Of a stretch of 39,416 nucleotides of DNA, positions 7,563 through 36,560 are shown one piece after another (position 1 is the first letter of the stretch; every line of letters begins with the position of its first letter). The notes below the pieces were generated by a model. It was not told the origin of the DNA, did not search any database, and saw only the letters and a program-made list of their open reading frames with translations. This DNA is from Octopus sinensis (Eukaryota): positions 1 through 39,416 of the forward strand of contig NW_021835552.1 of assembly GCF_006345805.1 (NCBI RefSeq), in the 5' to 3' direction. The position numbers and the translations under genes were made by a program.

Positions 7563-8084
7563 GTTATAGAATAAACTATTATACTATACTTCGATACACA
7601 GCAGTACTCCGCAGACTTCTACATACAGCTTCTCGACACTTCATTGCAATATGCGATAGCATGAGACACTCTAGCAAAATAAAACAAACATATTTTTAAA
7701 AAAACGAAACGTCTTAAAATTATTTAAGTGAAGAAGAAAGATAACTCTCTTCTGAAATATATTCTATCTTTTTGAAGTTATTTCCCTTGGGAATTCGTTA
7801 AACAATATGGAATTCACCCATGGGAGAGAATAACTTAGAAAGTAGATTTCGTTAATTTACAATGAGAGTTCAATAATCAATAAGAGAAACAGCTGCGTTT
7901 TAATACTTAATAATCTACGGTGCAGCATCGCACCATCGCACCTTCCCAAGACACCATATGCTGTAATCAGTGGAATAATTGAATACTTGTGCAACTGACG
8001 ATTGCTTCGTAGAATCATTGTAGTTTCGATATGGGAAATGTTGTTGATGTTGTTTGGGTTGTTATGTTTTCTTATACTTTTGTT

Positions 8085-8520
8085 TCTTCTTCCTTTTCTT
8101 CTTTTACGTCTTCTTCTTCCTTTTCTTCTTTTTCATCTTCTTCTTCCTTTTCTTCTTTTTCATTTTCTTCCTTTTCTTCTTTTTCACCTTCTTCCTTTTC
8201 TTCTTTTCCATCTTCTTCTTCCTTTTCTTCTTATTTTCATTCTTCTTCTTTTCTTCTTCTTCTCCTCCTTATTTTTCTTCCTTTTCTTCTTCTTCTCCTC
8301 CTTATTTTTTTCCTTTTCTTCTTCTTCTCCTCCTTATTTTTCTTCCTTTTCTTCCTTTTCTTCTTCCTTTTCTTCTTCCTTTTCTTCTTCCTTTTCTTCT
8401 TCTTCTTCTACTTCTTCTTCTTCCTTTTCTTCTTTTTCTTCTTCTTATTATTTTTATTCTCCCTCTTCCTCTTCGTCTTTTTTTCTTATTTTTCTTCTCC
8501 CTATTTTTCTTCTTCTTCTC
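8085..8520. repeat. ~435-bp near-pure polypyrimidine tract built from CTT/CTTTT units
   Basis: Recurring TTCTTCTTCCTTTTCTTC-type units. Confidence 0.95.
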
Positions 8521-8574
8521 TATCGTTATATGCATGCATAGTTCTAACGGTCATGCCAGCCCGCCGATTTGCAC

Positions 8575-8644
8575 ACAGACAGACAGACAGGTAGGTAGGT
8601 AGGTAGGTAGGTAGGTAGGTAGGTAAGTGGTAGACGGACAGACG

Positions 8645-11964: not shown

Positions 11965-12099
11965 TTATTATTTCTATATTTGTCCTGTATTGTACCGACA
12001 CTGCTCGGGGCAACCCCCAAAACACTGCTCTTGCGAATTGGTATCATTAGGCTGTTGCTAGCATAATAATACATGCTTTAAAACGTTATTTGTACCTAT

Positions 12100-12394
12100 C
12101 ATATATATATTATATATATATAAATTATATTATATATATAATATACACATATGTATGTATTATATATTGATATGTTTCTGTATCTAATGTAGTATGTATA
12201 TATGTATGTACGTACGAGATATATATATATATATATAATATATATATATATGTATATATATTATTCAAAGAAATTCCAACTCTGTTTTTAATATTTTATT
12301 TATATTCTTTATAACATTAATGTAGAATATAGAATATATAGTATACATAATATATATTAGTAAAATATATCCCTCTATACACAATCATACAAAC

Positions 12395-12428
<34 letters not shown>

Positions 12429-12693
12429 ATATATATATATATAGAATATGTTCATTGAATACACTTTAATATATTTAGAGTTAGAATATTCAACTGAGAA
12501 TTGTAATATAATAGGTAAAATAATCATATATCTTTCCATAGTTTAATAGATTGAGTGATAGATAGATAGATAAACACAAATAGATAGATAGAGATATATA
12601 AATAGATAGATAGATAGATATGATATAATAGATATAGATAGATAGATATATAGATAAATATAAATAGATTGATAGATAGATAGATAGATATAA

Positions 12694-12773
<80 letters not shown>

Positions 12774-12899
12774 GTAGGTAGGTAGGTAGACAGGTAGGTA
12801 GGTATCACAGAATAAATTTATGAAATTTATACAGTATTATATATTCCAAAGAGTAATAATATTACGATATGCTAATAATCAGCGCAGTGTAGTGATATA

Positions 12900-12931
<32 letters not shown>

Positions 12932-13251
12932 CGGTAAAGAAATTTGAGAAATTTGAAAAGAAAATAGGAAACCGGTTATTTTTTCCCAAAAAAAAGACAC
13001 GTTACTTTACACAAACTTTTATAACATTTTCCTATCATAACGATTTAAATATATTCTTTAACCATATAACACAAGTCTTCTGCAGTGTTTTCACTCTATT
13101 TTGTCTTGTATACATCCGACCTCGTGCTTTCACACACATACATACACACACACACATGTGTATATATACTATAATATATATAATATATATATATATATAT
13201 AGATAATATATATTATATATAATATAATATATATATATATATACATATATC

Positions 13252-13305
<54 letters not shown>

Positions 13306-13347
13306 ATATATATATATATATATATATAGTATGTATATATATATATG

Positions 13348-13391
<44 letters not shown>

Positions 13392-13815
13392 TAGATAGAT
13401 AGATGATAGATAGATAGATAGATAGATATTATTAAATTATATAAAGCACACGGAAACAATATATTATGGAAAGTAGCAATATATAAGATGGTACAAACAT
13501 ACGCACCTGTACACAGGTAAGCATATATATATATATATTGTATAATATTAAGAAAACAGCACACTATTCCAGAAAAGTTGAATATTTATGTGTGTGTCTG
13601 AGGGTTTGAGAGACAGACAGACAGGGAAAATGAGTGTGTGTCTCTGAATCTTTGTTGGGCTTTCTGTCCGTGGGTGTGTCCGAGAATGGTGAGTTATTTG
13701 CGTTTTTATGTGCAATATAGAAGAAAAAATATATATCTTATTTTAAGAAGATGTGCATAAAGTATTAAGGTATGTGATAAACGTAACAGTATATGCATAG
13801 AATAAAAAACACGTG

Positions 13816-13895
<80 letters not shown>

Positions 13896-14276
13896 TGGAA
13901 CTATCTATCTATATATATATATATATAGACATATATATGTACATATATATATAGATATATATATATATGGGGGGGGGCTCTCTGCGTTTGAAGTGAACGT
14001 CAAATTGGGGGAGATAAAGAGAAGGAGCAAGAGAGACAGGCAGACAGACAGATATATGGTAATATCTGGTTATGGATATATAGATATATATGTATACAAA
14101 ACATATGCATGCATATATTTAATTAGATACACACATACACATACACGCATACATATATGTGTATGTTTATGTGTGTGCTTGTGCGTGTGTATTTATACTC
14201 AGATATTGTAATATATATATATATATATATATACATATATTTATAGATTGATAGATAGATAGATGAATAGATAGAT

Positions 14277-14349
<73 letters not shown>

Positions 14350-14539
14350 CTTATATGTATATATCATATGTACTTCAGAGCAAAATTGTGCGCAGAGAAT
14401 ATGTGTCTCAACCTAATTCCGGCATAACCAAATTCTCGTATTTATTGTCGCATTTCGATTAGTATTTTTCGGTTTTTACAGCATCCTTCAGGTAATATTC
14501 AGGTAGCAACGATAACTACAATCAAGTGGGGTTGATTTT

Positions 14540-14583
<44 letters not shown>

Positions 14584-14633
14584 AGTGTTTATAAAGTCGG
14601 TGCATAGGTATATATTCAAATATAAATATATAA

Positions 14634-14673
<40 letters not shown>

Positions 14674-14763
14674 TGTGTAAGTTCATATATATAGATATTT
14701 ATATTATGCATATATATATTATATATATATCTATATATATACATACATATTACTATATATATA

Positions 14764-14797
<34 letters not shown>

Positions 14798-14912
14798 TGT
14801 ATTATATTGATATGCTTTATAATAATATTTTCCATCATATAACTACCAGTCTATTAAATATGTGTGTTTGTATATAATATTATATATATATATTATATAT
14901 ATATATATATAA

Positions 14913-14966
<54 letters not shown>

Positions 14967-14969
14967 CGT

Positions 14970-15011
<42 letters not shown>

Positions 15012-15140
15012 ATGTATGATGTATGTATGTATGTATGTATGTATGTATGTATGCTTGTATGTATATGTATGTATGTATGTATGTACGATGATATTAGATA
15101 ATAGGTATATATATATATATATATATATATTTATAATATA
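12100..15140. repeat. Extended field of (TA)n, (GATA)n, (GT)n and (TATG)n microsatellites separated by short unique spacers
   Basis: Direct reading; explains the many YI/LSIY/CV ORFs in the track. Confidence 0.9.
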
Positions 15141-16103
15141 TATGTATTATTGTGTGCATTCAGAAAGGCACGTGAGAGAGTATTAACCAATCGGCGTTCA
15201 CCATTAGTGCCCAAGCACTTAAAAGAGACAGCTTGTATGTGAGCAAATATACCATTTCATGCATGTATGTATATAAATTGATAGGCATGCATAAATTCAA
15301 GCATATGTCTATGTATGTGTATATATGTTGTATAAAGTGTAATAAAACTTCAGCATAATATATATTTATGCGTCGTGCATGAGTACATTATACATGTATG
15401 GCTCAGAATAATTTTATTGAAGATTATAACAATATTTATACGTATATATTATTAAAAAAAAAGAAGTATATTTCATAATGGAGTATCATACTATATTATA
15501 TTGATATCGTGTACAATAATATTTTCCATAATATAAATACCAGTTTATTAGATAAAATATAGATATATTTTAGCGTAGATATTGGAAAATAATGCTTTAG
15601 TTTAAATACACTTCGCATGCAATTGTATTCGACAACCTGTGTAAGATATTTACATGTAGATCTGTGTGTGCATTTATGTATGTATGTATATATATATACA
15701 TGTGTGTGTGTATGTGTGCATTTATATATATCCCCATATATTCATTGCGCTCTATTGTAATTTCATTGAAGTGTTGACGTGACAATATAGGTATTGTCAC
15801 TTCAATAAAGAAATGTTGTATAAATAATAGATGTATGTCTATATCTCCACATATACGTATACATATATATATATTAATCTCTCTATCTATCTATCTTTAT
15901 ACGTATTCGAATTTGTATTGATATGCATGAGTTTGTGTGTATGTGTTCATATTTAAGTATATGCATGCACACGTATGTATATATATGTACATTCCTCTTC
16001 TTTCTGTGTACCTCTTCTCTCTAACTATTTTTCTAATCAGTCGCCATGCATGACCGCTAAATCCACATTTTTTTTTCATTCTCTCTCTGTTTATATTCTC
16101 GTG

Positions 16104-16519: not shown

Positions 16520-16740
16520 GTATGTATGTATGTATGTATGTATGTATGTATGTATGTATGTATGTATGTATGTACGTATGTATGTATGTATGTATGTTGT
16601 ATGTATGTATGTATGTATGTATGTATGTACTGTGTCTGTATGTATGTATGTATGATGTATGTATGTATGTATGTTGTACGTATGTACGTATGTATGTATA
16701 TGTATGTATGTATGTATGTAGTATGTATGTATGTATGGGA
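16520..16740. repeat. (TATG)n microsatellite
   Basis: Direct reading. Confidence 0.95.
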
Positions 16741-17229
16741 TGTATGTGTAGGGGAATCTTTTTCTACCGTTTTAATTGCTAGGTGCTGAAAGGCATAAGG
16801 CAGATGTGAGTTGCAATCATTAGCAATTTCTATTGAATTGCTAGATTAAAATAAATATAATTTTAATGCGGAGAGAAGGAATATTTCCTAACTACTCTGG
16901 AACATAAGAAAAGACTCTGGGCTCTAGGATATTTTATGGACCCCGAAATGACGAAAAGGTAGAGCTGGACTCCGCTGCATTTGAACTGGGAGTGTGAAGA
17001 GCTACGAGAATATAGTTATAAAATAAATAACAACCGACACCACTAAACACAGTTACTACTTCATGTCCCAAAAACTATGAAGTGAAATATTGCCAGGAGA
17101 AAAAGAAGTATAACCAACAACAACAATAATTGCAGCCGCAGCTGCAGAAATAGAAGCAATAAGACATCTATCTGCATCATTGCATCATCATAGAATCCAA
17201 TAATCCTGTAAGTGTATATACGTACGCGC

Positions 17230-17373
17230 TCTAACACACACACAAACACACACACACACACGCACACATGCACACACATATGCACACTTGTACACTGCCA
17301 TATATATATATATATGTGTGTGTATATGCACGTGTAAGTGTGTATGTAAATATGTAAACTTACCTATCTCTCC

Positions 17374-18097: not shown

Positions 18098-21088
18098 TTA
18101 CGTTTCTACCGTTACTTTCTTACGTAACACTTTCACGATACCGGAATCAGATTCGGAGAGATAAAACGTCATTCCGTCTGGAGACATGTCAAGGCCACGT
18201 GGTAGCGTGAGGCCGTCGCTGGCGTCGTACATAATCTTATCAAACAAACCGTTTCCGTTAAGTCTGTAGATTTTGTTGGCTTCGCTGTCGGCAAGATAGA
18301 TAAAGCCGTTGTCATCCACGCAAACCCCGCTCGGCTTCATTAGAGAGTGCTCCACGCTGCCTGTGTACAAGAACTTTACATCTCCTTCTATATTACAACA
18401 GATTAAAGCTGAGCGTTTACAGTCAGATATCAAAAAATAGCCATCTTCGGCGACCTTTGCTAAATAACGAGGCTCAATCAGACGCCCGTATTCTTCTCTC
18501 AGAGTTGAAAGAGTCTGAAGAATTTCTCCGTTCAAGCTCAGTAAATCAACAGCGTTGTCCCTCGAGCAGATGAGCCGTTTCGAATCCATCTTGGCCACGC
18601 CGATATATTGGTTTTCGACGACGACTTTAGTGGAGATAGCTAAGAAATTGCTGCGTGTGTCTCTCATGAGGAAACATATAGATTTCGACCAAGGTAGTAC
18701 ACAGACGACCATGTATTCGGATATCGCGCAAATTCCTGTCGGAGATCCTTCCACGGAGCAACACGCCAGAAGGTGTCCCTCCTTATTGAATTCTTTTATG
18801 TTCTTGTGGTGAAAATCCGAGACCACAATTCGATCGTCGTTTAGAAATAAAACATCAAAGAGTAAAATCGGTTTGTTGACCTCTGACACTTCATTGACCG
18901 ATCCCAGAAAAGCATATGCCAGAGGACTTGAACCGGAAGGAAAAAGTCGTGACCCCACATTTGTCTTGTCTTTGTCTGCTCGCGCTGGCACGAGAGCGTT
19001 GGGGTTGTCCACTTCTGACTGGCTTTTACTGTCGATATCACTGGCTAAGGTTTCTGTTGAAGTAGCAGGTTCCAAGGGAGAGGCGTCCCCTATTTCACCA
19101 ATCAAAAGTCCATTAGTCGGCATCGTGTCATCAGGAAAGTTCTGAACGAGATCTGCATTTGGGAACTGTTTCAACCTTTCAAAAAAGGCCGAGATTTCGT
19201 TGTTGTACCTCAGGAATATTCTGGTTACAACGTTACTACTCAGTGGCTCAGTCATTTCTTTAAACTGAAGCGTTTTATTGATGTCGTGGAAGATATTTAT
19301 CATCTGGTCATCGTGGGCCTCATCCAGGGCAACATCCATACATAGAAACGACTGATTCAATATCTCAATCTGCATTTCCGTTTGTTGGATTTCGCTTCGT
19401 AATTTTTCCTCCTCAACAGAAACCATCTGACCGACTTCCACATGCAGTTTCACCAAAGCCTCCGTCTGTAGTTTCAATACAATTTCGTTAATAGTCGAAT
19501 CAACATCACGAATTAGAGAAGCTTTCTTTGTTTTAAGACCGTTCAATCGCTTCTGCAGTTCCTGAATCACCGATAATTTGTTTTCTTTTCTCGATGCGAG
19601 CGTCCTCAGAATCCCCTCTCCTTCTCGCCGTTTCTCGCTTGCAATATCAGACAGTAACATCGGTTGCTGTCCATCGCTTGCGTGCTTCTCTCTGTAATGT
19701 TGGGAACTGCACTGCAGACACAACGGGATCCGACAACTGCTGCAGTAAACGGAAAAATAATCTAAATGCTTCTCACAGATCGATGATATACCCAGGAGTT
19801 TTTGATGCTTGTTTTTCGAAATATCGAATATATTGTGTGATCTAAACGGATCGAACCCCTTATGAAGGTCTGTACACATGTGACAGTATCCTTGCCCACA
19901 TTGTATGCACCAGGTTATTGCAATCTTTATAATATTCCGTTTGAAGCAAGACGTACATTTCTGCTCTTCGCGGCTTCGTCGGTCGGCTTTGAGTAGATAT
20001 TCCACGAAATCGTTTATTGGGAATTTATTCATAACTATTTCTTTGATGGCACTGTTCTGAACAATTGGTTCCGTCACTGGAATTTCTACATTCAGTTTGA
20101 TTTCGATTTTGCATTTGGGACACCAAATCCTAGTTGCCACGCACAAAAGATCGTTGTCTGTATAATCGGGTTTCACAGCAAATGCCATAAAGTTTTCTCT
20201 GTCGTACATCGACAGAGCCAAACTGTCGTGTACACTTCCGCTATCTCCGACAAGGGACTCGGCTTTACTAACTGACCTCAATGATCTTTCTGACTTCATT
20301 GATCGCTCAGACTTCACGGATCTTTCTGATCTAACAGATCTCATTGATTCCCGACGGCTCTCACTTCTTGCTCCAGTCGGGGTCTTGGGGATCTCCACGT
20401 CATTGGCTATATTCTTTTTGCTGGCCTTTTCTTCGGGTTTCTCTTTCTTTGCTCCTTCTTCATCACTATCTTCAAACGGGTTATAATTTTTATTCGGGGG
20501 TTGCCCATCGTTAGCCTCTTCGTTATTTTCGCCACTATTAACCACTTCCTCTTTCTTTTCTTCCTCATTCTTCTTATCGTTTTCATTGTTTTCTTTCTCA
20601 TCGTCTTTCTTCTTTTTCTCTTCTTTCTTAGCGAGATTCTTCGCTGACCTTCGACTTGAAAAGAAAAATGAGAACCGGCTGCGCACTGGAGGTTTCTCCG
20701 GGGGCTCTTCTTCCTCGGGCGGTTTATCTGAAGTAGGTGTATCCGCAGCCGGTTCATCAGTCTCTACTGCTTCGTCTTCGGTGGTATTGGCTTTACTCAC
20801 CGATGACTTCCTTGATATTATCGCTGTTGAACAGGTACTGTCAATACTGCTTCGCTTACTCAACGTTGCCGTTGATGCGACGCTCGCTTTTTCCAGATCC
20901 ATTTCTCTTCGTGCCAACAGGGCGTCTTTCCGTCGCACGATAGACTCGATGGCCCGCACCAAAATCCGATGAGTCAAACATCGTTCACAAAACGTATGCA
21001 AACAAGGGAATCGCCGTGGCGGTGTGGTGAATCTATTTTCGCATAGATTGCAAGTTAATATGTTTTTGTAAGACATTTTGATCCTCAT
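18098..21088 (-). CDS. TRIM-NHL (RBCC-NHL) family protein, putative E3 ubiquitin ligase, 996 aa, single uninterrupted ORF; start may be M5 (ATG at 21076)
   Basis: RING ligands C13,C16,C29,H31,C34,C37 then C323,C326 (WCPKC). B-box1 from C378 (CTSC...CIQC...CHMC...H...H). B-box2 from C438 (CEKH...CSSC...CLQC...H...H). Heptad-rich coiled coil ~aa 480-610. NHL blades ~aa 740-990 (PTGICA, PRYLA, PSGVCVDDNGFIYLADSEANKI, PRGLDMSPDG). The 3-kb stop-free ORF is richer in GC than its flanks. M5 has AAA-ATG context. The orthologue cannot be named from sequence alone. Confidence 0.95.
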   Translation of the reverse strand: MRIKMSYKNILTCNLCENRFTTPPRRFPCLHTFCERCLTHRILVRAIESIVRRKDALLARREMDLEKASVASTATLSKRSSIDSTCSTAIISRKSSVSKANTTEDEAVETDEPAADTPTSDKPPEEEEPPEKPPVRSRFSFFFSSRRSAKNLAKKEEKKKKDDEKENNENDKKNEEEKKEEVVNSGENNEEANDGQPPNKNYNPFEDSDEEGAKKEKPEEKASKKNIANDVEIPKTPTGARSESRRESMRSVRSERSVKSERSMKSERSLRSVSKAESLVGDSGSVHDSLALSMYDRENFMAFAVKPDYTDNDLLCVATRIWCPKCKIEIKLNVEIPVTEPIVQNSAIKEIVMNKFPINDFVEYLLKADRRSREEQKCTSCFKRNIIKIAITWCIQCGQGYCHMCTDLHKGFDPFRSHNIFDISKNKHQKLLGISSICEKHLDYFSVYCSSCRIPLCLQCSSQHYREKHASDGQQPMLLSDIASEKRREGEGILRTLASRKENKLSVIQELQKRLNGLKTKKASLIRDVDSTINEIVLKLQTEALVKLHVEVGQMVSVEEEKLRSEIQQTEMQIEILNQSFLCMDVALDEAHDDQMINIFHDINKTLQFKEMTEPLSSNVVTRIFLRYNNEISAFFERLKQFPNADLVQNFPDDTMPTNGLLIGEIGDASPLEPATSTETLASDIDSKSQSEVDNPNALVPARADKDKTNVGSRLFPSGSSPLAYAFLGSVNEVSEVNKPILLFDVLFLNDDRIVVSDFHHKNIKEFNKEGHLLACCSVEGSPTGICAISEYMVVCVLPWSKSICFLMRDTRSNFLAISTKVVVENQYIGVAKMDSKRLICSRDNAVDLLSLNGEILQTLSTLREEYGRLIEPRYLAKVAEDGYFLISDCKRSALICCNIEGDVKFLYTGSVEHSLMKPSGVCVDDNGFIYLADSEANKIYRLNGNGLFDKIMYDASDGLTLPRGLDMSPDGMTFYLSESDSGIVKVLRKKVTVET

Positions 21089-29555: not shown

Positions 29556-30078
29556 TTGGGTTATCCCTAAAAGCAGGTAATAATATTATCTTGTCTTTAT
29601 TCTTAAGTACAAGTTTTGAAGACTGCGGTTCGATTTTAACAGTTATTTTTTCAAAGCTAGAATGGAATTGACAAAAGATCATATTCGGCATATTTTGTTT
29701 TATGAGTTCAATAGAGGCAACAACGCAGCGGAAAGTGCGAGGAATATTAATACAGTGTATGGGGATCGTACAATAAGCGTATGCTGGGAGGATCTGTAGA
29801 TCTCGACGAGGACATCCTGCAAACCCCGGTGGAACAAAATCCCATTGTAACTGTTGAGGGACCAGCAGAGAAGCTTGGATTTGGTCATTCAACCATTCTC
29901 CGATATCTGCGTGCCATCGAAAAAGTCAGCAAATTGAGTCAATGGGTTCCTCACAAACTGTCTGAGTTTAATCACGCCGTACAGAGAGTGAATGTGTGCC
30001 CTTCTTTTCTGTCGCGTCTCACGAATGAAACTTTCTGGGATCGAATAGTGACCGGTGACGAGAAATTGGTTCTCCTAA
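29556..30078 (+). pseudogene. Mariner transposase relic 1 (5' end, internal deletion, 3' truncated)
   Basis: TA|TTGGGTTATCC TIR-like start. ATG at 29662 gives MELTKDHIRHILFYEFNRGNNAAESARNINTVYG (mariner HTH). After a frameshift come WVPHKL and FWDRIVTGDEKLV (first catalytic Asp region). The relic ends in (TA)n. Confidence 0.9.
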
Positions 30079-31213
30079 TATATATATATATATACACAAG
30101 TTTTCCCGCAATTTCCGTTCACAGAATTCTATCACAAGACATTGGTCTAGCCAAGCAATATCATAAGATACTTGCTCAAACAAGGTGCTGCACAATGGGA
30201 TTGAACTTGAAGCTCCATCGCTGCAAACGCCGAACACATGATCTCAGTATAAACAGCTGTTTGAAAATGTCACTGCGACACAATGAAACTAAATGCATGA
30301 TATCATATGTAAAACACCATAAAATGCAATTTGCAGAATTCAAAATGAATTCAAATTAGCAGAGAGCATGTATGTACAGGGTATCAATAGGAATAAGCTA
30401 TTAATCTAGCGTCAAGTTTAACGTGGATATATTCTCACTGACTACGCTTTATTAAGACAAGAAACCGATCCGCTAAGTGCTGCAGTTTCTGTCCACAGAG
30501 TTATAAAACCAGTGGTAAAACCATTTTATTTACTATTCATTTTGAAGTTAAAACTCTATGTTTATTCAAAAGCATACTTTGAATTAGAAATTATTCAAAG
30601 CACGGTGTGTGCTGGGCTATGGACGAATAAATAAATCGATGCTGCTAACGTATACAATGTTATGCAAATGAAACTAATCGATTTGGATGACTCATAGTTT
30701 TAACATAAGGGGAATAGCTATAAGCTAATAGACTCTTAGTGTGCAATTGAAAACTGTAAATTTAGCAATACAGGTATCGATGGGAACTTGAACTGTCAAG
30801 GGTGATCTTGTCTCAGTACGTGTGGCCGCAGCCCTGGGTTGATTATTGTGGTAGACTGGCTGTTCTTTACTCATGAAAGTATTACTCATCCTCACTGTTG
30901 ATGTTTATCCAATAAAATTTCAAAGAGTTGAACTGATGGAGCCCCGCATCAGTGATGCTGGAAATCTTTGTCTGATGGCAAATTGACGGAACAAACTCAG
31001 TATTGAATCTTGCAGAACCTTCTCACACTGTTCTGCCAATCCAGTGACTTGTACTTTGTATTTATTTTATCGACCCCGAAAAGGAAGTCACAGCAAAATT
31101 AAGCTCAGAGGGATTTAGACTCAGAATACAGGGCATTATGATATATACCACTAGGTATATCTAATGAATCTGCTGATATGCAACACGGGAACTGAGAGCA
31201 TATATATGTATAT

Positions 31214-32145: not shown

Positions 32146-32552
32146 CTTATTTAATTTTTTATTGCCCACAGGGGGCTAAACATAGGACAGTCAAAGGCAC
32201 TAAGTCGATTACATCGACCCTAGTGCGTAACTGGTACTTAGTTAATCGACCCCGAAAGGATGAAAGACAAAGTCGACCTCGGCGGAATTTGAACTCAGGA
32301 CGTAACGGCAGACACAATACCTATTTCTTTACTACCCACAAGGGGCTAAACACAGAGTGGTCGAATACGGAAAAACAAACGGATTAAGTCGATTATATGG
32401 ACCCCAGTGCGTAACTGGTACTTATTTAATCGACCCCGAAAGGATGAAAGGCAAAGTCGACCTCGGCAGGAATTGAACTCAGAACGTAGCGGCTGACGAA
32501 ATACCGCTAAGCATTTCGCCCGGCGTGCTAACGTTTCTGCCAGCTCGCCGCC
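32146..32552 (-). mobile_element. SINE family A dimer (full unit 32321-32552 plus headless unit 32146-32320)
   Basis: Two bodies joined at AAAGAAATAG|GTATT. Flanking GGCTTCTAGT (32136-32145) / GGCTTCTGGT (32553-32562). Confidence 0.9.
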
Positions 32553-32602
32553 GGCTTCTGGTGGCAGAACCCGAACTATATATAATACAATAGAGAAAGT
32601 TT

Positions 32603-33097
32603 CGTGTGTGTGTGTGTGTATGTGTGTATGTGTGTGTGTTGTGTGTGGTGTGTGTGTGTGCGTGTGTGTGTGTGTGTGTGTGCGTGTGTGTGTGTTTGTG
32701 TGTTGTGCGGGTGTTGTGTGGTGTGTGTGTGTGGTGTGTGTGCGTTGTGTGGAGTGCGTGTGTGGTGTGTGTGGTGTGTGTGCGTGTGTGTGTGTGTGTG
32801 GTGCGCGTGTGTGTGTGTGTGTGTTGTGTGTGTGTGTGCACGCGTGTGGTGTGTGTGTGTGTGGCGTGTGTGTGTGGTGTGTGTGTGCGTGGGTGTGTGT
32901 GTGCGTGTGTGTGCGTTTGTGTTGCGTGTGTGTGTGTGTGTGTGCGTGTGTGTGTGTGTGTGTGCGCGATGTGTGCGGTGTGTGTGTGTGTGTGTGTGTG
33001 TGTGCACGCGTGTTGTGTGTGTGTGTTGTGTGAGGTGTGTGTGTGTGTGGTGCGTTGTGTTGTGTGTGTGTGTGTGTGTATTTGTGTGTGTGTGTGT
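32603..33097. repeat. ~500-bp degenerate (GT)n/(GC) tract
   Basis: Direct reading. Confidence 0.95.
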
Positions 33098-33397
33098 GGC
33101 CTCTTGAAAGTCACATAGGAATGAGTGCATGAACGATATTAAATTATGCAAATACATGCAGAATGTATCGATTTAACATCTATCGAACGTTTGTGCTGCG
33201 TATCTGGAGTGAAATTAGCATACATCGAAAACAAGCACACATACTCATTCATACACACACACACACACGCACTTGCTTACACACGTACGCTCAGACACAC
33301 TCACACACAGGCAAAGGTGCACATACACACAATTGAACAACCATACACACATGGAGTTTCATACACGAATACGCGCACTCTCACATGCATAGATCCG

Positions 33398-36035: not shown

Positions 36036-36560
36036 TAGCCGTATTTCGTCGGCCATTACGTTCTGAGTTCAAATTCCGCCGAGGTCGACTTTGCCTTTCA
36101 TCCTTTCGGGGTCGATTAAATAAGTACCAGTTACGCACTGAGGTCGATGTAATCGACTTAATCCATTTATCTGTCCTCGTTTGTCCCCTCTATGTTTAGC
36201 CCCTTGTGGGTAGTAAAGAAATAGGTATTTCGAGTCTTTACGTTCTGAGTTCAAATTCCGCCGAGGTCGACTTTGTCTTTCATCCTTTCGGAGTCGATAA
36301 ATTAAGTAATAGTTACGCACTGGGGTCGATGCAATCGACTTAATCCCCTTGTCTGTCCTTGTTTGTTCCCTCTGTTTTTAGCCCCTTGTGAGTAGTAAAG
36401 AAATAGGTATTTCGAGTTCAAATTCCGCCGAGGTAAATTTTACCTTTCCCCCTTTCGAGGTCAATAATTTAATTACCGGTTGCGTACTGAGGTCGATCTA
36501 ATCGACTAGCCCCCTCTCCCGCCAAATTTCGGGCCTTGTGCCAAGAGTAGAACGTAATAT
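36036..36560 (+). mobile_element. SINE family A trimer (tail1, tail1, tail2), 5' head missing
   Basis: Units start at 36036, 36225 and 36407; junctions read AAAGAAATAG|GTATTTCG. Confidence 0.9.

What the first reader, a model, noticed from the sequence alone, without database searches (positions are those of the whole stretch)
20111..21052. RING finger split by 285 residues between zinc ligands 6 and 7
Seen: C13-x2-C16-x12-C29-x-H31-x2-C34-x2-C37 is a textbook C3HC4 start, but the closing pair C323-x2-C326 (IWCPKC) comes 285 residues later. It is followed by a typical TRIM post-RING segment (FPINDFVEYLL). The spacer is in frame, stop-free, and rich in E/K/S/P. Established: this RING loop is normally tens of residues at most, and the x-P-x-C element forms part of the E2-binding surface. 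Inference: either a RING that closes around a huge disordered loop, making a ligase with an embedded regulatory/adaptor module, or a RING-dead TRIM repurposed as a scaffold. This is the best candidate for novel biology in the window.
Basis: partly seen in the sequence, partly recalled or inferred. Interest (0 to 1): 0.82.

Follow-up and report, generated by a model that had tools for sequence, protein, structure and literature searches.

The report
Octopus TRIM-NHL RING with giant loop
An intronless octopus TRIM-NHL ubiquitin-ligase-type gene has a RING zinc finger whose last zinc-binding pair lies 285 residues downstream, after a translated, conserved, mostly disordered loop; this is an extreme case of a layout already present in the TRIM9/TRIM67 family, not a new kind of domain.

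Summary
One 996-aa ORF (18098-21088) encodes C13-x2-C16-x12-C29-x-H31-x2-C34-x2-C37, then 285 residues, then C323-P-K-C326. The rest is a complete TRIM-NHL protein: two B-boxes, coiled coil, NHL propeller.

The spacer is coding, not an intron or artefact. It stays open in four independent cephalopod assemblies, including Argonauta, where synonymous sites are saturated. All indels are in frame. dN/dS is 0.19-0.32, and about 0-0.05 at the two ends.

C323, P324 and C326 are invariant in a 35-protein alignment. With the spacer removed in silico, Pfam's RING model matches end to end, and the AlphaFold model superposes on the TRIM2 and TRIM32 RINGs. In the native model both halves are confident and residues 96-306 are disordered.

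Loop length rises across relatives: 12-34 in most, 59 in a mussel, 144 in the closest non-octopod relative, 273-285 in octopods.

There is a precedent. In 102 TRIM9/TRIM67 proteins the same loop is 64-150 residues.

Verdict: an intact RING around an unusually large disordered loop carrying conserved short motifs. It is a new variant of a known kind. Ligase activity is untested.

The parts
18098..21088 (-). Single-exon CDS of a TRIM-NHL protein (996 aa from M1; stop codon at 18098-18100). The conserved start is probably M5, at 21074-21076.
   Evidence: ORF list. Orthologous CDSs are single uninterrupted ranges in O. bimaculoides, Argonauta and the P0005 locus. In Argonauta the upstream ATG is followed by a stop, so M5 is the shared start.
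20978..21052 (-). RING N-terminal half: zinc ligands 1-6 (C13, C16, C29, H31, C34, C37).
   Evidence: Pfam RING models match aa 13-41 only (profile positions 1-29 of 40). 52% identical to the TRIM2 RING at rmsd 1.2 A over 33 columns. pLDDT 91-93.
20123..20977 (-). 285-aa insertion in RING loop 2, between ligands 6 and 7 (aa 38-322).
   Evidence: Stop-free, with 0 of 5000 shuffles stop-free. dN/dS 0.19-0.32 with p<1e-6, and all indels in frame. No Pfam family matches. pLDDT below 50 for aa 96-306.
20846..20977 (-). Insert head (aa 38-81): predicted long helix that continues the central RING helix alpha2.
   Evidence: AF2 helix 35-81, with 10-residue block means of 86-95 for aa 41-70. aa 38-65 have dN/dS 0.05 and are almost invariant in four octopods.
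20684..20803 (-). Acidic, Pro-containing block (aa 96-135), evolving nearly neutrally.
   Evidence: dN/dS 0.7-1.5, not different from 1. Indel-rich against Argonauta.
20648..20683 (-). Conserved basic/aromatic/Ser cluster RSRFSF(F/L)FSSRR (aa 136-147).
   Evidence: R136-F139, F141 and F143-R146 are invariant in four octopods inside a variable region. Function is inferred only; the resemblance to a MARCKS-type effector segment is from memory.
20489..20647 (-). K/E/N-rich low-complexity block (aa 148-200), partly made of short tandem DNA repeats.
   Evidence: TRF arrays at 20569-20629 with periods 9-25. AF2 gives a weak helix at 147-167.
20456..20482 (-). NPFEDSDEE (aa 203-211): an NPF motif followed by an acidic cluster; candidate EH-domain (EHD-type) docking site.
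   Evidence: N203, P204, F205, E206, S208, D209 and E211 are invariant in four octopods. It is the only NPF in the insert. C-terminal EHD proteins prefer NPF followed by acidic residues, e.g. MICAL-L1 NPFEEEEED (PMC13282721). Binding is not tested.
20261..20371 (-). Arg/Ser-rich SERSxK repeats (aa 240-276); likely phosphorylation-rich segment.
   Evidence: TRF period 18 nt x 3.2 copies at 20272-20329. dN/dS 0.18-0.36. Argonauta lacks one 6-codon unit.
20123..20260 (-). Insert tail (aa 277-322): strongly conserved, aromatic-rich segment leading into the strand before the closing Cys pair.
   Evidence: dN/dS 0.0 between the window and O. bimaculoides. aa 287-314 are almost invariant. Not confidently modelled until about aa 310.
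20108..20122 (-). RING closing element C323-P324-K325-C326 (zinc ligands 7 and 8) plus K327 at the linchpin position.
   Evidence: C323, P324 and C326 are invariant in 35 aligned TRIM-NHL proteins. pLDDT 93 for aa 321-330, at the turn of hairpin E315-322/E329-337. TRIM2 equivalents P61 (E2 contact) and R64 (linchpin) are from PMC9732051.
19967..20068 (-). Post-RING helices (aa 341-374), including FPINDFVEYLL, the counterpart of TRIM2 helix alpha3.
   Evidence: AF2 helices 341-355 and 360-374. The consensus FPxNxxxxxL is shared by relatives. F356 aligns with TRIM2 F81.
19835..19957 (-). B-box 1 (C378, C381, C394, C397, C402, C405, H409, H418).
   Evidence: Ligand pattern. Pfam B-box models score below their cut-offs. 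The AF2 model matches TRIM28 B-box1 at TMt 0.81, rmsd 1.9 A.
19682..19777 (-). B-box 2 (C438, H441, C449, C452, C457, C460, H464, H469).
   Evidence: Ligand pattern. PF00643 scores 17.5 bits, below its cut-off. Nearly invariant columns in the 35-protein alignment.
19109..19678 (-). Coiled-coil region (aa ~471-660).
   Evidence: Inferred from TRIM architecture and a weak sequence match of aa 369-543 to the TRIM28 RBCC structure (E 0.002). Not modelled here.
18101..18913 (-). C-terminal NHL-repeat beta-propeller (aa ~726-996).
   Evidence: PF01436 scores 31.6 bits against a cut-off of 20. TRIM2, TRIM3, TRIM71 and Thin NHL structures match at E 1e-7 to 1e-10.

Best explanation
This is an intact cross-brace C3HC4 RING finger at the N-terminus of a mollusc-specific, intronless TRIM-NHL protein. 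The variable loop between zinc ligands 6 and 7 has been expanded to 285 translated residues. The chain leaves the RING core as a long extension of the central helix (aa 38 to about 80). It then runs through about 210 disordered, low-complexity residues and returns through a conserved 45-residue tail into the beta-hairpin that carries C323-P-K-C326. That pair completes the second zinc site with C29 and H31. The RING therefore closes around the loop, as it must also do in TRIM9/TRIM67. The loop grew stepwise in the cephalopod lineage, partly by slippage of short repeats. Selection keeps its two ends and a few short islands: an NPF-acidic motif, a basic/aromatic/Ser cluster and Arg/Ser repeats. 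These most likely act as docking and phosphorylation sites placed next to the catalytic RING. What is shown: the sequence pattern, translation-level constraint, conservation of the closing pair, the graded loop lengths, and that the two halves can form a RING fold. What is inferred: that the two halves meet in the native protein, that the domain is an active E3, and what the motifs bind.
For: The closing pair is conserved. C13, C16, C29, H31, C34, C37, C323, P324 and C326 are the invariant RING columns in a 35-protein alignment of TRIM-NHL relatives.

The spacer is coding. It is open in the window, O. bimaculoides, an SRA-derived octopod contig and Argonauta. All 3-10 indel events per species pair are in frame. 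dN/dS is 0.19-0.32 (p 1e-7 to 1e-16) for the whole insert, 0.05 for the head and 0.0 for the tail.

The two halves are competent to form a RING. With the insert removed in silico, PF00097 matches profile positions 1-40 of 40 at 25.9 bits, above the cut-off of 21. The AF2 model of that construct (pLDDT 83) superposes on the TRIM2 RING (TMt 0.73) and the TRIM32 RING (TMt 0.79, rmsd 2.1 A).

In the native AF2 model of aa 1-480, pLDDT is 91-95 for aa 11-70, 93 for aa 321-330 and below 50 for aa 96-306.

Loop lengths rise at the same site across relatives. They are 12-34 (median about 19) in most, 59 in Potamilus, 144 in P0005 (39% identical and also single-exon), and 273-285 in octopods.

There is a precedent. 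The TRIM9/TRIM67 loop is 64-150 aa, median 83, in 102 proteins, and TRIM9 is treated in the literature as a substrate-ubiquitinating E3 (PMC13591260).

Several catalytic positions are kept by alignment to TRIM2 (PMC9732051): L15 for I25, P324 for P61, K327 for linchpin R64, and F356 for F81.
Against: Convergence of the halves is inferred from confidence values and homology.

No transcript evidence was obtained. The only short contig found (SRR11869394) is genomic, with TA microsatellites at both ends.

Only four sequences carry the full insert, so AF2 has little information there.

Features that may impair ligase activity: only 8 residues precede C13 from the conserved start, whereas TRIM2 needs its N-terminal helix alpha1 for the four-helix-bundle dimer and for activity. 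TRIM2 E2 contacts Y50 and V62 are replaced by R41 and K325.

The motif assignments rest on conservation in four related species. About 17 motif patterns were screened, so a chance match is possible.
Confidence: 0.75

Rival explanations
1. Pseudoligase or scaffold. The RING folds and binds zinc but does not activate E2~Ub. Possible reasons are failure to dimerise, blockage of the E2 surface by the long helix or loop, or changed E2-contact residues. The protein would then work as an NHL-based adaptor whose RING loop is merely a docking platform.
For: The conserved start leaves only MSYKNILT before C13. In TRIM2, helix alpha1 residues V12, I16 and F20 build the dimer, and the V12E change abolishes activity. 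TRIM3, whose N-terminal segment is unfolded, is monomeric and inactive (PMC9732051). TRIM2 E2 contacts Y50 and V62 correspond to R41 and K325. RING pseudoligases are documented in the TRIM family (PMC11992055).
Against: All eight zinc ligands, the hydrophobic residue after ligand 1 (L15), the CPxC proline, a positively charged linchpin (K327) and F356 are retained and invariant in octopods. The RING halves have the lowest dN/dS in the protein. That fits a maintained catalytic or at least structural role. TRIM9 tolerates a 94-aa loop at this site.
Confidence: 0.2
2. All or most of the spacer is an in-frame intron or exitron that is removed from the main mRNA, leaving an ordinary short-loop RING.
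For: The spacer length is a multiple of three. Removing it restores a canonical RING. No transcript data could be examined here.
Against: The frame stays open over about 850 nt in four species although synonymous sites against Argonauta are saturated (dS>2). dN/dS is well below 1 and every indel is in frame. A crude consensus scan finds no in-frame pair of a good donor with a pyrimidine-tract/YAG acceptor, and the coding strand is 62% purine. The gene calls for O. bimaculoides LOC106870183 and for Argonauta keep the spacer as coding sequence.
Confidence: 0.04
3. Assembly or annotation artefact: two unrelated pieces were joined, or a frameshifted pseudogene is being read as one ORF.
For: None found.
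Against: The same colinear architecture occurs in four independent assemblies. The 2991-nt ORF has no stops, and the whole protein is under purifying selection (non-insert dN/dS 0.08).
Confidence: 0.01

Closest known systems
TRIM9 / TRIM67 (class I TRIMs; C. elegans MADD-2 and Drosophila Trim9 are the invertebrate orthologues, the latter two named from memory)
   Same: A C3HC4 TRIM RING interrupted at exactly the same place, between ligand 6 and the closing CPxC. The interrupting loop is long, low-complexity and Ser/acidic-rich: 94 aa in mammalian TRIM9 and 64-150 aa across 102 family members, including arthropod and priapulid sequences.
   Different: These are a different TRIM class, with COS-FN3-SPRY C-termini rather than NHL. 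No sequence similarity between the loops was found. The octopod loop is about twice the family maximum and begins with a conserved roughly 45-residue helical extension. The insertions are independent events.
Human TRIM2 / TRIM3 (class VII TRIM-NHL; RING structures 8A38, 7ZJ3, 8AMS, 8AMR)
   Same: These are the best solved-structure matches for both the RING (PCLHTFCERCL is identical; E 2e-6) and the NHL propeller (E 1e-10). The order RING, B-box, coiled coil, NHL is the same. E2-contact Pro, linchpin basic residue and alpha3 Phe are conserved.
   Different: TRIM2 loop 2 is 13 residues. TRIM2/3 have a filamin domain (PF00630) and one B-box, whereas the octopus protein has no filamin hit and two B-boxes. 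The octopus N-terminal helix alpha1 is truncated. It is not an orthologue.
Bivalve 'TRIM2-like / TRIM56-like / TRIM45-like' proteins (e.g. Pecten maximus XP_033759177.1, Potamilus streckersoni KAK3611357.1) and the unnamed protein P0005 (ENA ERZ21867824)
   Same: Apart from P0005, these bivalve proteins are the closest full-length TRIM-NHL relatives found outside octopods. They share RING, two B-boxes, coiled coil and NHL without filamin, and their loop 2 is already acidic/Ser-rich and longer than usual: 31-59 aa in bivalves, 144 aa in P0005.
   Different: Identity is 23-39%. They lack the helical head, the NPF motif, the RSRFSF cluster, the RS repeats and the conserved tail of the octopod insert. 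The bivalve proteins instead carry a long Ser/Pro-rich linker before the NHL domain.

Membership tests
C3HC4 RING finger (PF00097; cross-brace double zinc site) | Eight zinc ligands in the order C-C-C-H-C-C-C-C with C-x2-C, C-x-H, C-x2-C and C-x2-C pairs | tested here: met
   C13, C16, C29, H31, C34, C37, C323 and C326. All are invariant in the 35-protein alignment.
C3HC4 RING finger (PF00097; cross-brace double zinc site) | Loop between ligands 6 and 7 within the canonical range (4-48 residues in the classical pattern, recalled from memory) | tested here: not met
   The loop is 285 residues. Relatives have 12-59. On the native sequence Pfam aligns only profile positions 1-29 of 40.
C3HC4 RING finger (PF00097; cross-brace double zinc site) | End-to-end match to the family profile above the curated cut-off | tested here: met
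   The native protein scores 22.4 bits against a cut-off of 21, but only as a partial match. With aa 49-311 removed in silico it scores 25.9 bits over profile positions 1-40 of 40.
C3HC4 RING finger (PF00097; cross-brace double zinc site) | RING fold with both zinc sites formed | tested here: inconclusive
   The excised construct models as a TRIM RING (TMt 0.73-0.79 to 8A38 and 5FEY). In the native model both halves have pLDDT above 90.
C3HC4 RING finger (PF00097; cross-brace double zinc site) | E2~Ub activation (ubiquitin ligase activity) | not testable with these tools
   Only residue comparison was possible. L15, P324, K327 and F356 are kept; R41 and K325 differ from TRIM2 Y50 and V62.
TRIM / RBCC | RING followed by B-box(es) and a coiled coil, in that order | tested here: met
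   The B-box1 and B-box2 ligand patterns are complete. Pfam B-box hits fall below their cut-offs (17.5-18 bits). The AF2 model matches TRIM28 B-box1 (TMt 0.81) and tandem B-boxes. aa 369-543 match the TRIM28 RBCC structure (E 0.002).
TRIM-NHL (class VII-like) | C-terminal NHL-repeat beta-propeller | tested here: met
   PF01436 scores 31.6 bits against a cut-off of 20. TRIM2, TRIM3, TRIM71 and Thin NHL structures match.
TRIM2/TRIM3 orthologue group | Filamin/ABP280 repeat between the coiled coil and NHL | tested here: not met
   PF00630 gives no hit in the window protein. True TRIM2/3-like proteins found in the same session (P0162-P0166) carry PF00630.
TRIM9/TRIM67 (class I) | Long loop between RING ligands 6 and 7 | tested here: met
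   64-150 aa in TRIM9/67 against 285 aa here. The position is the same.
TRIM9/TRIM67 (class I) | COS box, FN3 and SPRY C-terminal domains, and sequence homology to TRIM9 | tested here: not met
   The C-terminus is NHL. The best sequence matches are TRIM2/3, not TRIM9.

The most novel reading that the evidence does not exclude
The loop may be a functional module built into the catalytic domain rather than a passive spacer. In this reading the conserved helical head and aromatic tail form a small structured collar beside the E2-binding face. The NPF-acidic motif and the basic/aromatic/Ser cluster would tether the RING to EHD-coated endosomal membranes. Phosphorylation of the Arg/Ser repeats would switch E2 access or RING self-association, making up for the missing alpha1 dimerisation helix. 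That would be a ligase whose regulation and targeting are encoded inside the RING finger itself.
Probability: 0.15. Interest if true: 0.55.

Novelty: new variant of a known kind. Interest (0 to 1): 0.3.

Why it matters
The case shows how far the ligand 6-7 loop of a RING can be stretched while selection still maintains the closing zinc pair. At 273-285 residues in octopods it is about twice the largest loop I found in TRIM9/TRIM67.

It also offers a natural graded series (about 19, 34, 59, 144 and 285 residues) for asking whether such loops are neutral expansions or acquire docking and regulatory functions next to the E2 site.

Practically, domain annotators see only a partial RING match here, and one precomputed entry lists only NHL. 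Similar split RINGs are therefore likely under-counted in invertebrate genomes. None of this changes the understanding of RING mechanism unless the loop proves to regulate activity.

Tried and rejected
1. The plus-strand reading of the given coordinates gives only stops.

2. A word-indexed search with the whole protein found only three orthologues and one weak hit. A second search with a loop-trimmed profile added only filamin-containing TRIM2/3-like proteins and did not recover P0005 or the bivalve relatives.

3. I hoped the 3.6-kb SRA contig (L004) was a transcript. It ends in TA microsatellites on both sides and is colinear with the genomic flanks, so it is genomic and says nothing about splicing.

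4. A Foldseek search with the native 480-aa model aligned only the N-terminal RING half (33 columns), because a local alignment cannot span a 285-residue gap. Model coordinates are not exposed, so zinc-site distances could not be computed.

5. The insert alone has no Pfam match at E<=1. No protein outside the orthologues matched it, so I found no donor gene or domain for the insert.

6. Literature searches for an explicit description of very long RING loop insertions found none. The PDB holds no TRIM9 or TRIM67 RING. The TRIM9/67 precedent was therefore established directly from sequences.

7. The organism behind P0005 (ENA ERZ21867824) could not be identified, so the 144-aa stage cannot be placed on the tree.

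8. Rfam, tRNA and Pfam scans of the rest of the window gave nothing.
Full report
**Observation.** The coordinates are right but the frame is on the minus strand. The plus-strand translation of 20111-21052 is full of stops. A single 996-aa ORF runs from 21088 to 18098 on the minus strand. Within it, C13 (21050-21052), C16, C29, H31, C34 and C37 form the first six RING ligands. Residues 38-322 (20123-20977) are the 285-residue spacer. C323-P-K-C326 (20111-20122) follows, and the DNA reads ATT TGG TGT CCC AAA TGC AAA. The spacer has no stop in frame, against 11 and 29 stops in its other two frames, and none of 5000 shuffles of its DNA was stop-free. It is rich in E, S, K, R, A and D; proline makes up only 5%.

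**What the gene is.** Pfam finds a RING at aa 13-41 that covers only profile positions 1-29 of 40. It also finds two sub-threshold B-box hits (aa 378-419 and 436-469) and an NHL repeat above its cut-off. The zinc-ligand patterns of both B-boxes are complete. The best solved-structure matches are the TRIM2 and TRIM3 RINGs (E 2e-6; PCLHTFCERCL is identical) and the TRIM2/3/71/Thin NHL propellers (E down to 1e-10). No filamin domain is present, so this is a TRIM-NHL protein but not a TRIM2/3 orthologue. Apart from microsatellites, it is the only substantial ORF in the repeat-rich 39-kb window.

**The spacer is coding sequence.** Three close orthologues were found: O. bimaculoides LOC106870183 (92% identity), an octopod contig from SRR11869394 (88%) and Argonauta hians (73%). 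All keep the spacer (273-277 aa) and the WCPKC element.
- In O. bimaculoides and Argonauta the CDS is one uninterrupted range in a chromosome-scale sequence.
- Nei-Gojobori dN/dS for the whole spacer is 0.19-0.32 among the three Octopus-level sequences (p 1e-7 to 1e-16 for dN<dS), against 0.08 for the rest of the protein.
- The first 28 residues of the spacer score 0.05 and the last 46 score 0.0, as constrained as the RING itself. Only the acidic block aa 96-135 looks neutral, at 0.7-1.5.
- Against Argonauta, synonymous sites are saturated (dS>2), yet the frame stays open and all 7-10 indel events in the spacer are whole codons.
- A crude consensus scan finds no in-frame pairing of a good donor with a pyrimidine-tract/YAG acceptor, and the coding strand is 62% purine.
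- I could not obtain transcript evidence. The SRA contig is genomic.

**The closing pair belongs to the RING.** In a 35-protein alignment of TRIM-NHL relatives, the invariant RING columns are C13, C16, C29, H31, C34, C37, C323, P324 and C326; P23 is the only other invariant column. With aa 49-311 removed in silico, PF00097 matches positions 1-40 of 40 at 25.9 bits, above the cut-off of 21. An AlphaFold2 model of that 114-residue construct (mean pLDDT 83) superposes on the TRIM2 RING (TMt 0.73) and the TRIM32 RING (TMt 0.79, rmsd 2.1 A).

The native aa 1-480 model gives pLDDT 91-95 for aa 11-70, including a helix from 35 to 81 that extends the central RING helix. pLDDT is below 50 for aa 96-306 and 93 for aa 321-330, where CPKC sits at the turn of a hairpin. 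I therefore could not measure whether C323 and C326 reach C29 and H31. That step remains an inference.

**Origin of the loop.** An exhaustive HMMER search with aa 297-996 followed by a RING scan gave these loop-2 lengths:

| Relatives | Loop 2 (aa) |
|---|---|
| Most TRIM-NHL relatives (about 30) | 12-28, median about 19 |
| Pecten 'TRIM2-like' protein; P0015 (source not identified) | 34; 31 |
| Potamilus (freshwater mussel) protein | 59 |
| P0005 (39% identical, E 4e-116, single-exon, unidentified ENA assembly) | 144 |
| Octopods | 273-285 |

The intermediate loops are also acidic and Ser-rich. Short tandem DNA repeats lie in the RS block (18-nt period, 20272-20329) and in the K/E block (20569-20629). 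This points to slippage as one mode of growth.

**Conserved islands in the loop.**
- The helical head, aa 38-65.
- RSRFSF(F/L)FSSRR, aa 136-147.
- NPFEDSDEE, aa 203-211.
- SERSxK repeats, aa 240-276.
- The aromatic tail, aa 277-322.

NPF followed by acidic residues is the preferred ligand of C-terminal EHD proteins, as in MICAL-L1 NPFEEEEED (PMC13282721). The motif is therefore a candidate endocytic-recycling docking site. This rests on conservation in four related species and on a screen of about 17 patterns, so it is a lead and not a result.

**Is it likely to be an active ligase?** The comparison is by alignment to TRIM2 (PMC9732051).
- Kept: L15 for I25, P324 for P61, K327 for linchpin R64, and F356 for F81.
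- Changed: R41 for Y50 and K325 for V62.
- In Argonauta the upstream ATG is followed by a stop, so the shared start is M5 and only eight residues precede C13.
- TRIM2 needs its N-terminal helix for the four-helix-bundle dimer and for activity. TRIM3, which lacks a folded N-terminal helix, is inactive alone.

A pseudoligase reading therefore stays open at about 0.2, with precedents in PMC11992055.

**Comparison with what is known.** I recalled that TRIM9 has a long loop at this position and tested it. The recalled N-terminus matched proteins named TRIM9 at 98-99% identity. In 102 TRIM9/TRIM67-family proteins, including arthropod and priapulid sequences, the distance from ligand 6 to CPxC is 64-150 residues (median 83; 94 in mammals). 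One further apparent value of 210 came from a motif mis-hit and was discarded. TRIM9 is treated as a substrate-ubiquitinating E3 in the literature (PMC13591260). A long disordered loop at this site is thus an established, if rarely remarked, RING layout that is compatible with activity. The octopod case is an independent and roughly two-fold more extreme instance in a different TRIM class.

**Verdict.** The claim of novel biology is weakened by the TRIM9/67 precedent. Novelty: a new variant of a known kind. Interest: 0.3. The most novel reading still open is that the loop is a regulatory and targeting module built into the catalytic domain (probability about 0.15).

Noticed in passing
window 21074-21088 (-); L001 5985-6003: The first ATG of the ORF (MRIK-M) is probably not the start. 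In Argonauta the equivalent upstream ATG reads MRLK and then a stop, and two orthologue models start at MSYKN. That leaves only 8 residues before the first RING cysteine.
   Followed up: yes
window 20123-20260 (-), aa 277-322: The last 46 residues of the insert have no non-synonymous change between the window and O. bimaculoides and are rich in aromatics, yet AlphaFold gives them low confidence until about aa 310. This is a strongly constrained segment with no assigned structure or partner.
   Followed up: partly
window 29781-30359 (+): A 192-aa ORF whose sequence (…HSTILRYLRAIEKVSKLSQWVPHKLSE…WDRIVTGDEK…) looks, from memory, like the N-terminal part of a mariner/Tc1-type transposase. Pfam gave no hit at E<=0.01, so it is at best a degraded remnant.
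   Followed up: partly
window 36056-36417: Two tandem copies of a 182-bp unit (91% matches) that looks like a dispersed-repeat element. There was no Rfam family and no tRNA-like gene by ARAGORN.
   Followed up: partly
window 12001-16000: A 4-kb stretch with only 22-27% G+C, made largely of (TA)n and (ATAG)n microsatellites. Across the window, simple repeats produce many spurious long ORFs, e.g. 8002-8602 and 32479-33157.
   Followed up: no
window 16700-17310 (roughly) vs L002 9660-10280 (roughly): About 0.8-1.4 kb downstream of the stop codon, a 626-nt block is 87% identical between the window and O. bimaculoides. That is as conserved as synonymous sites in the CDS; it may be 3'UTR or another conserved non-coding element.
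   Followed up: no
Its source species, and hence the age of the loop expansion, is unknown.
   Followed up: partly
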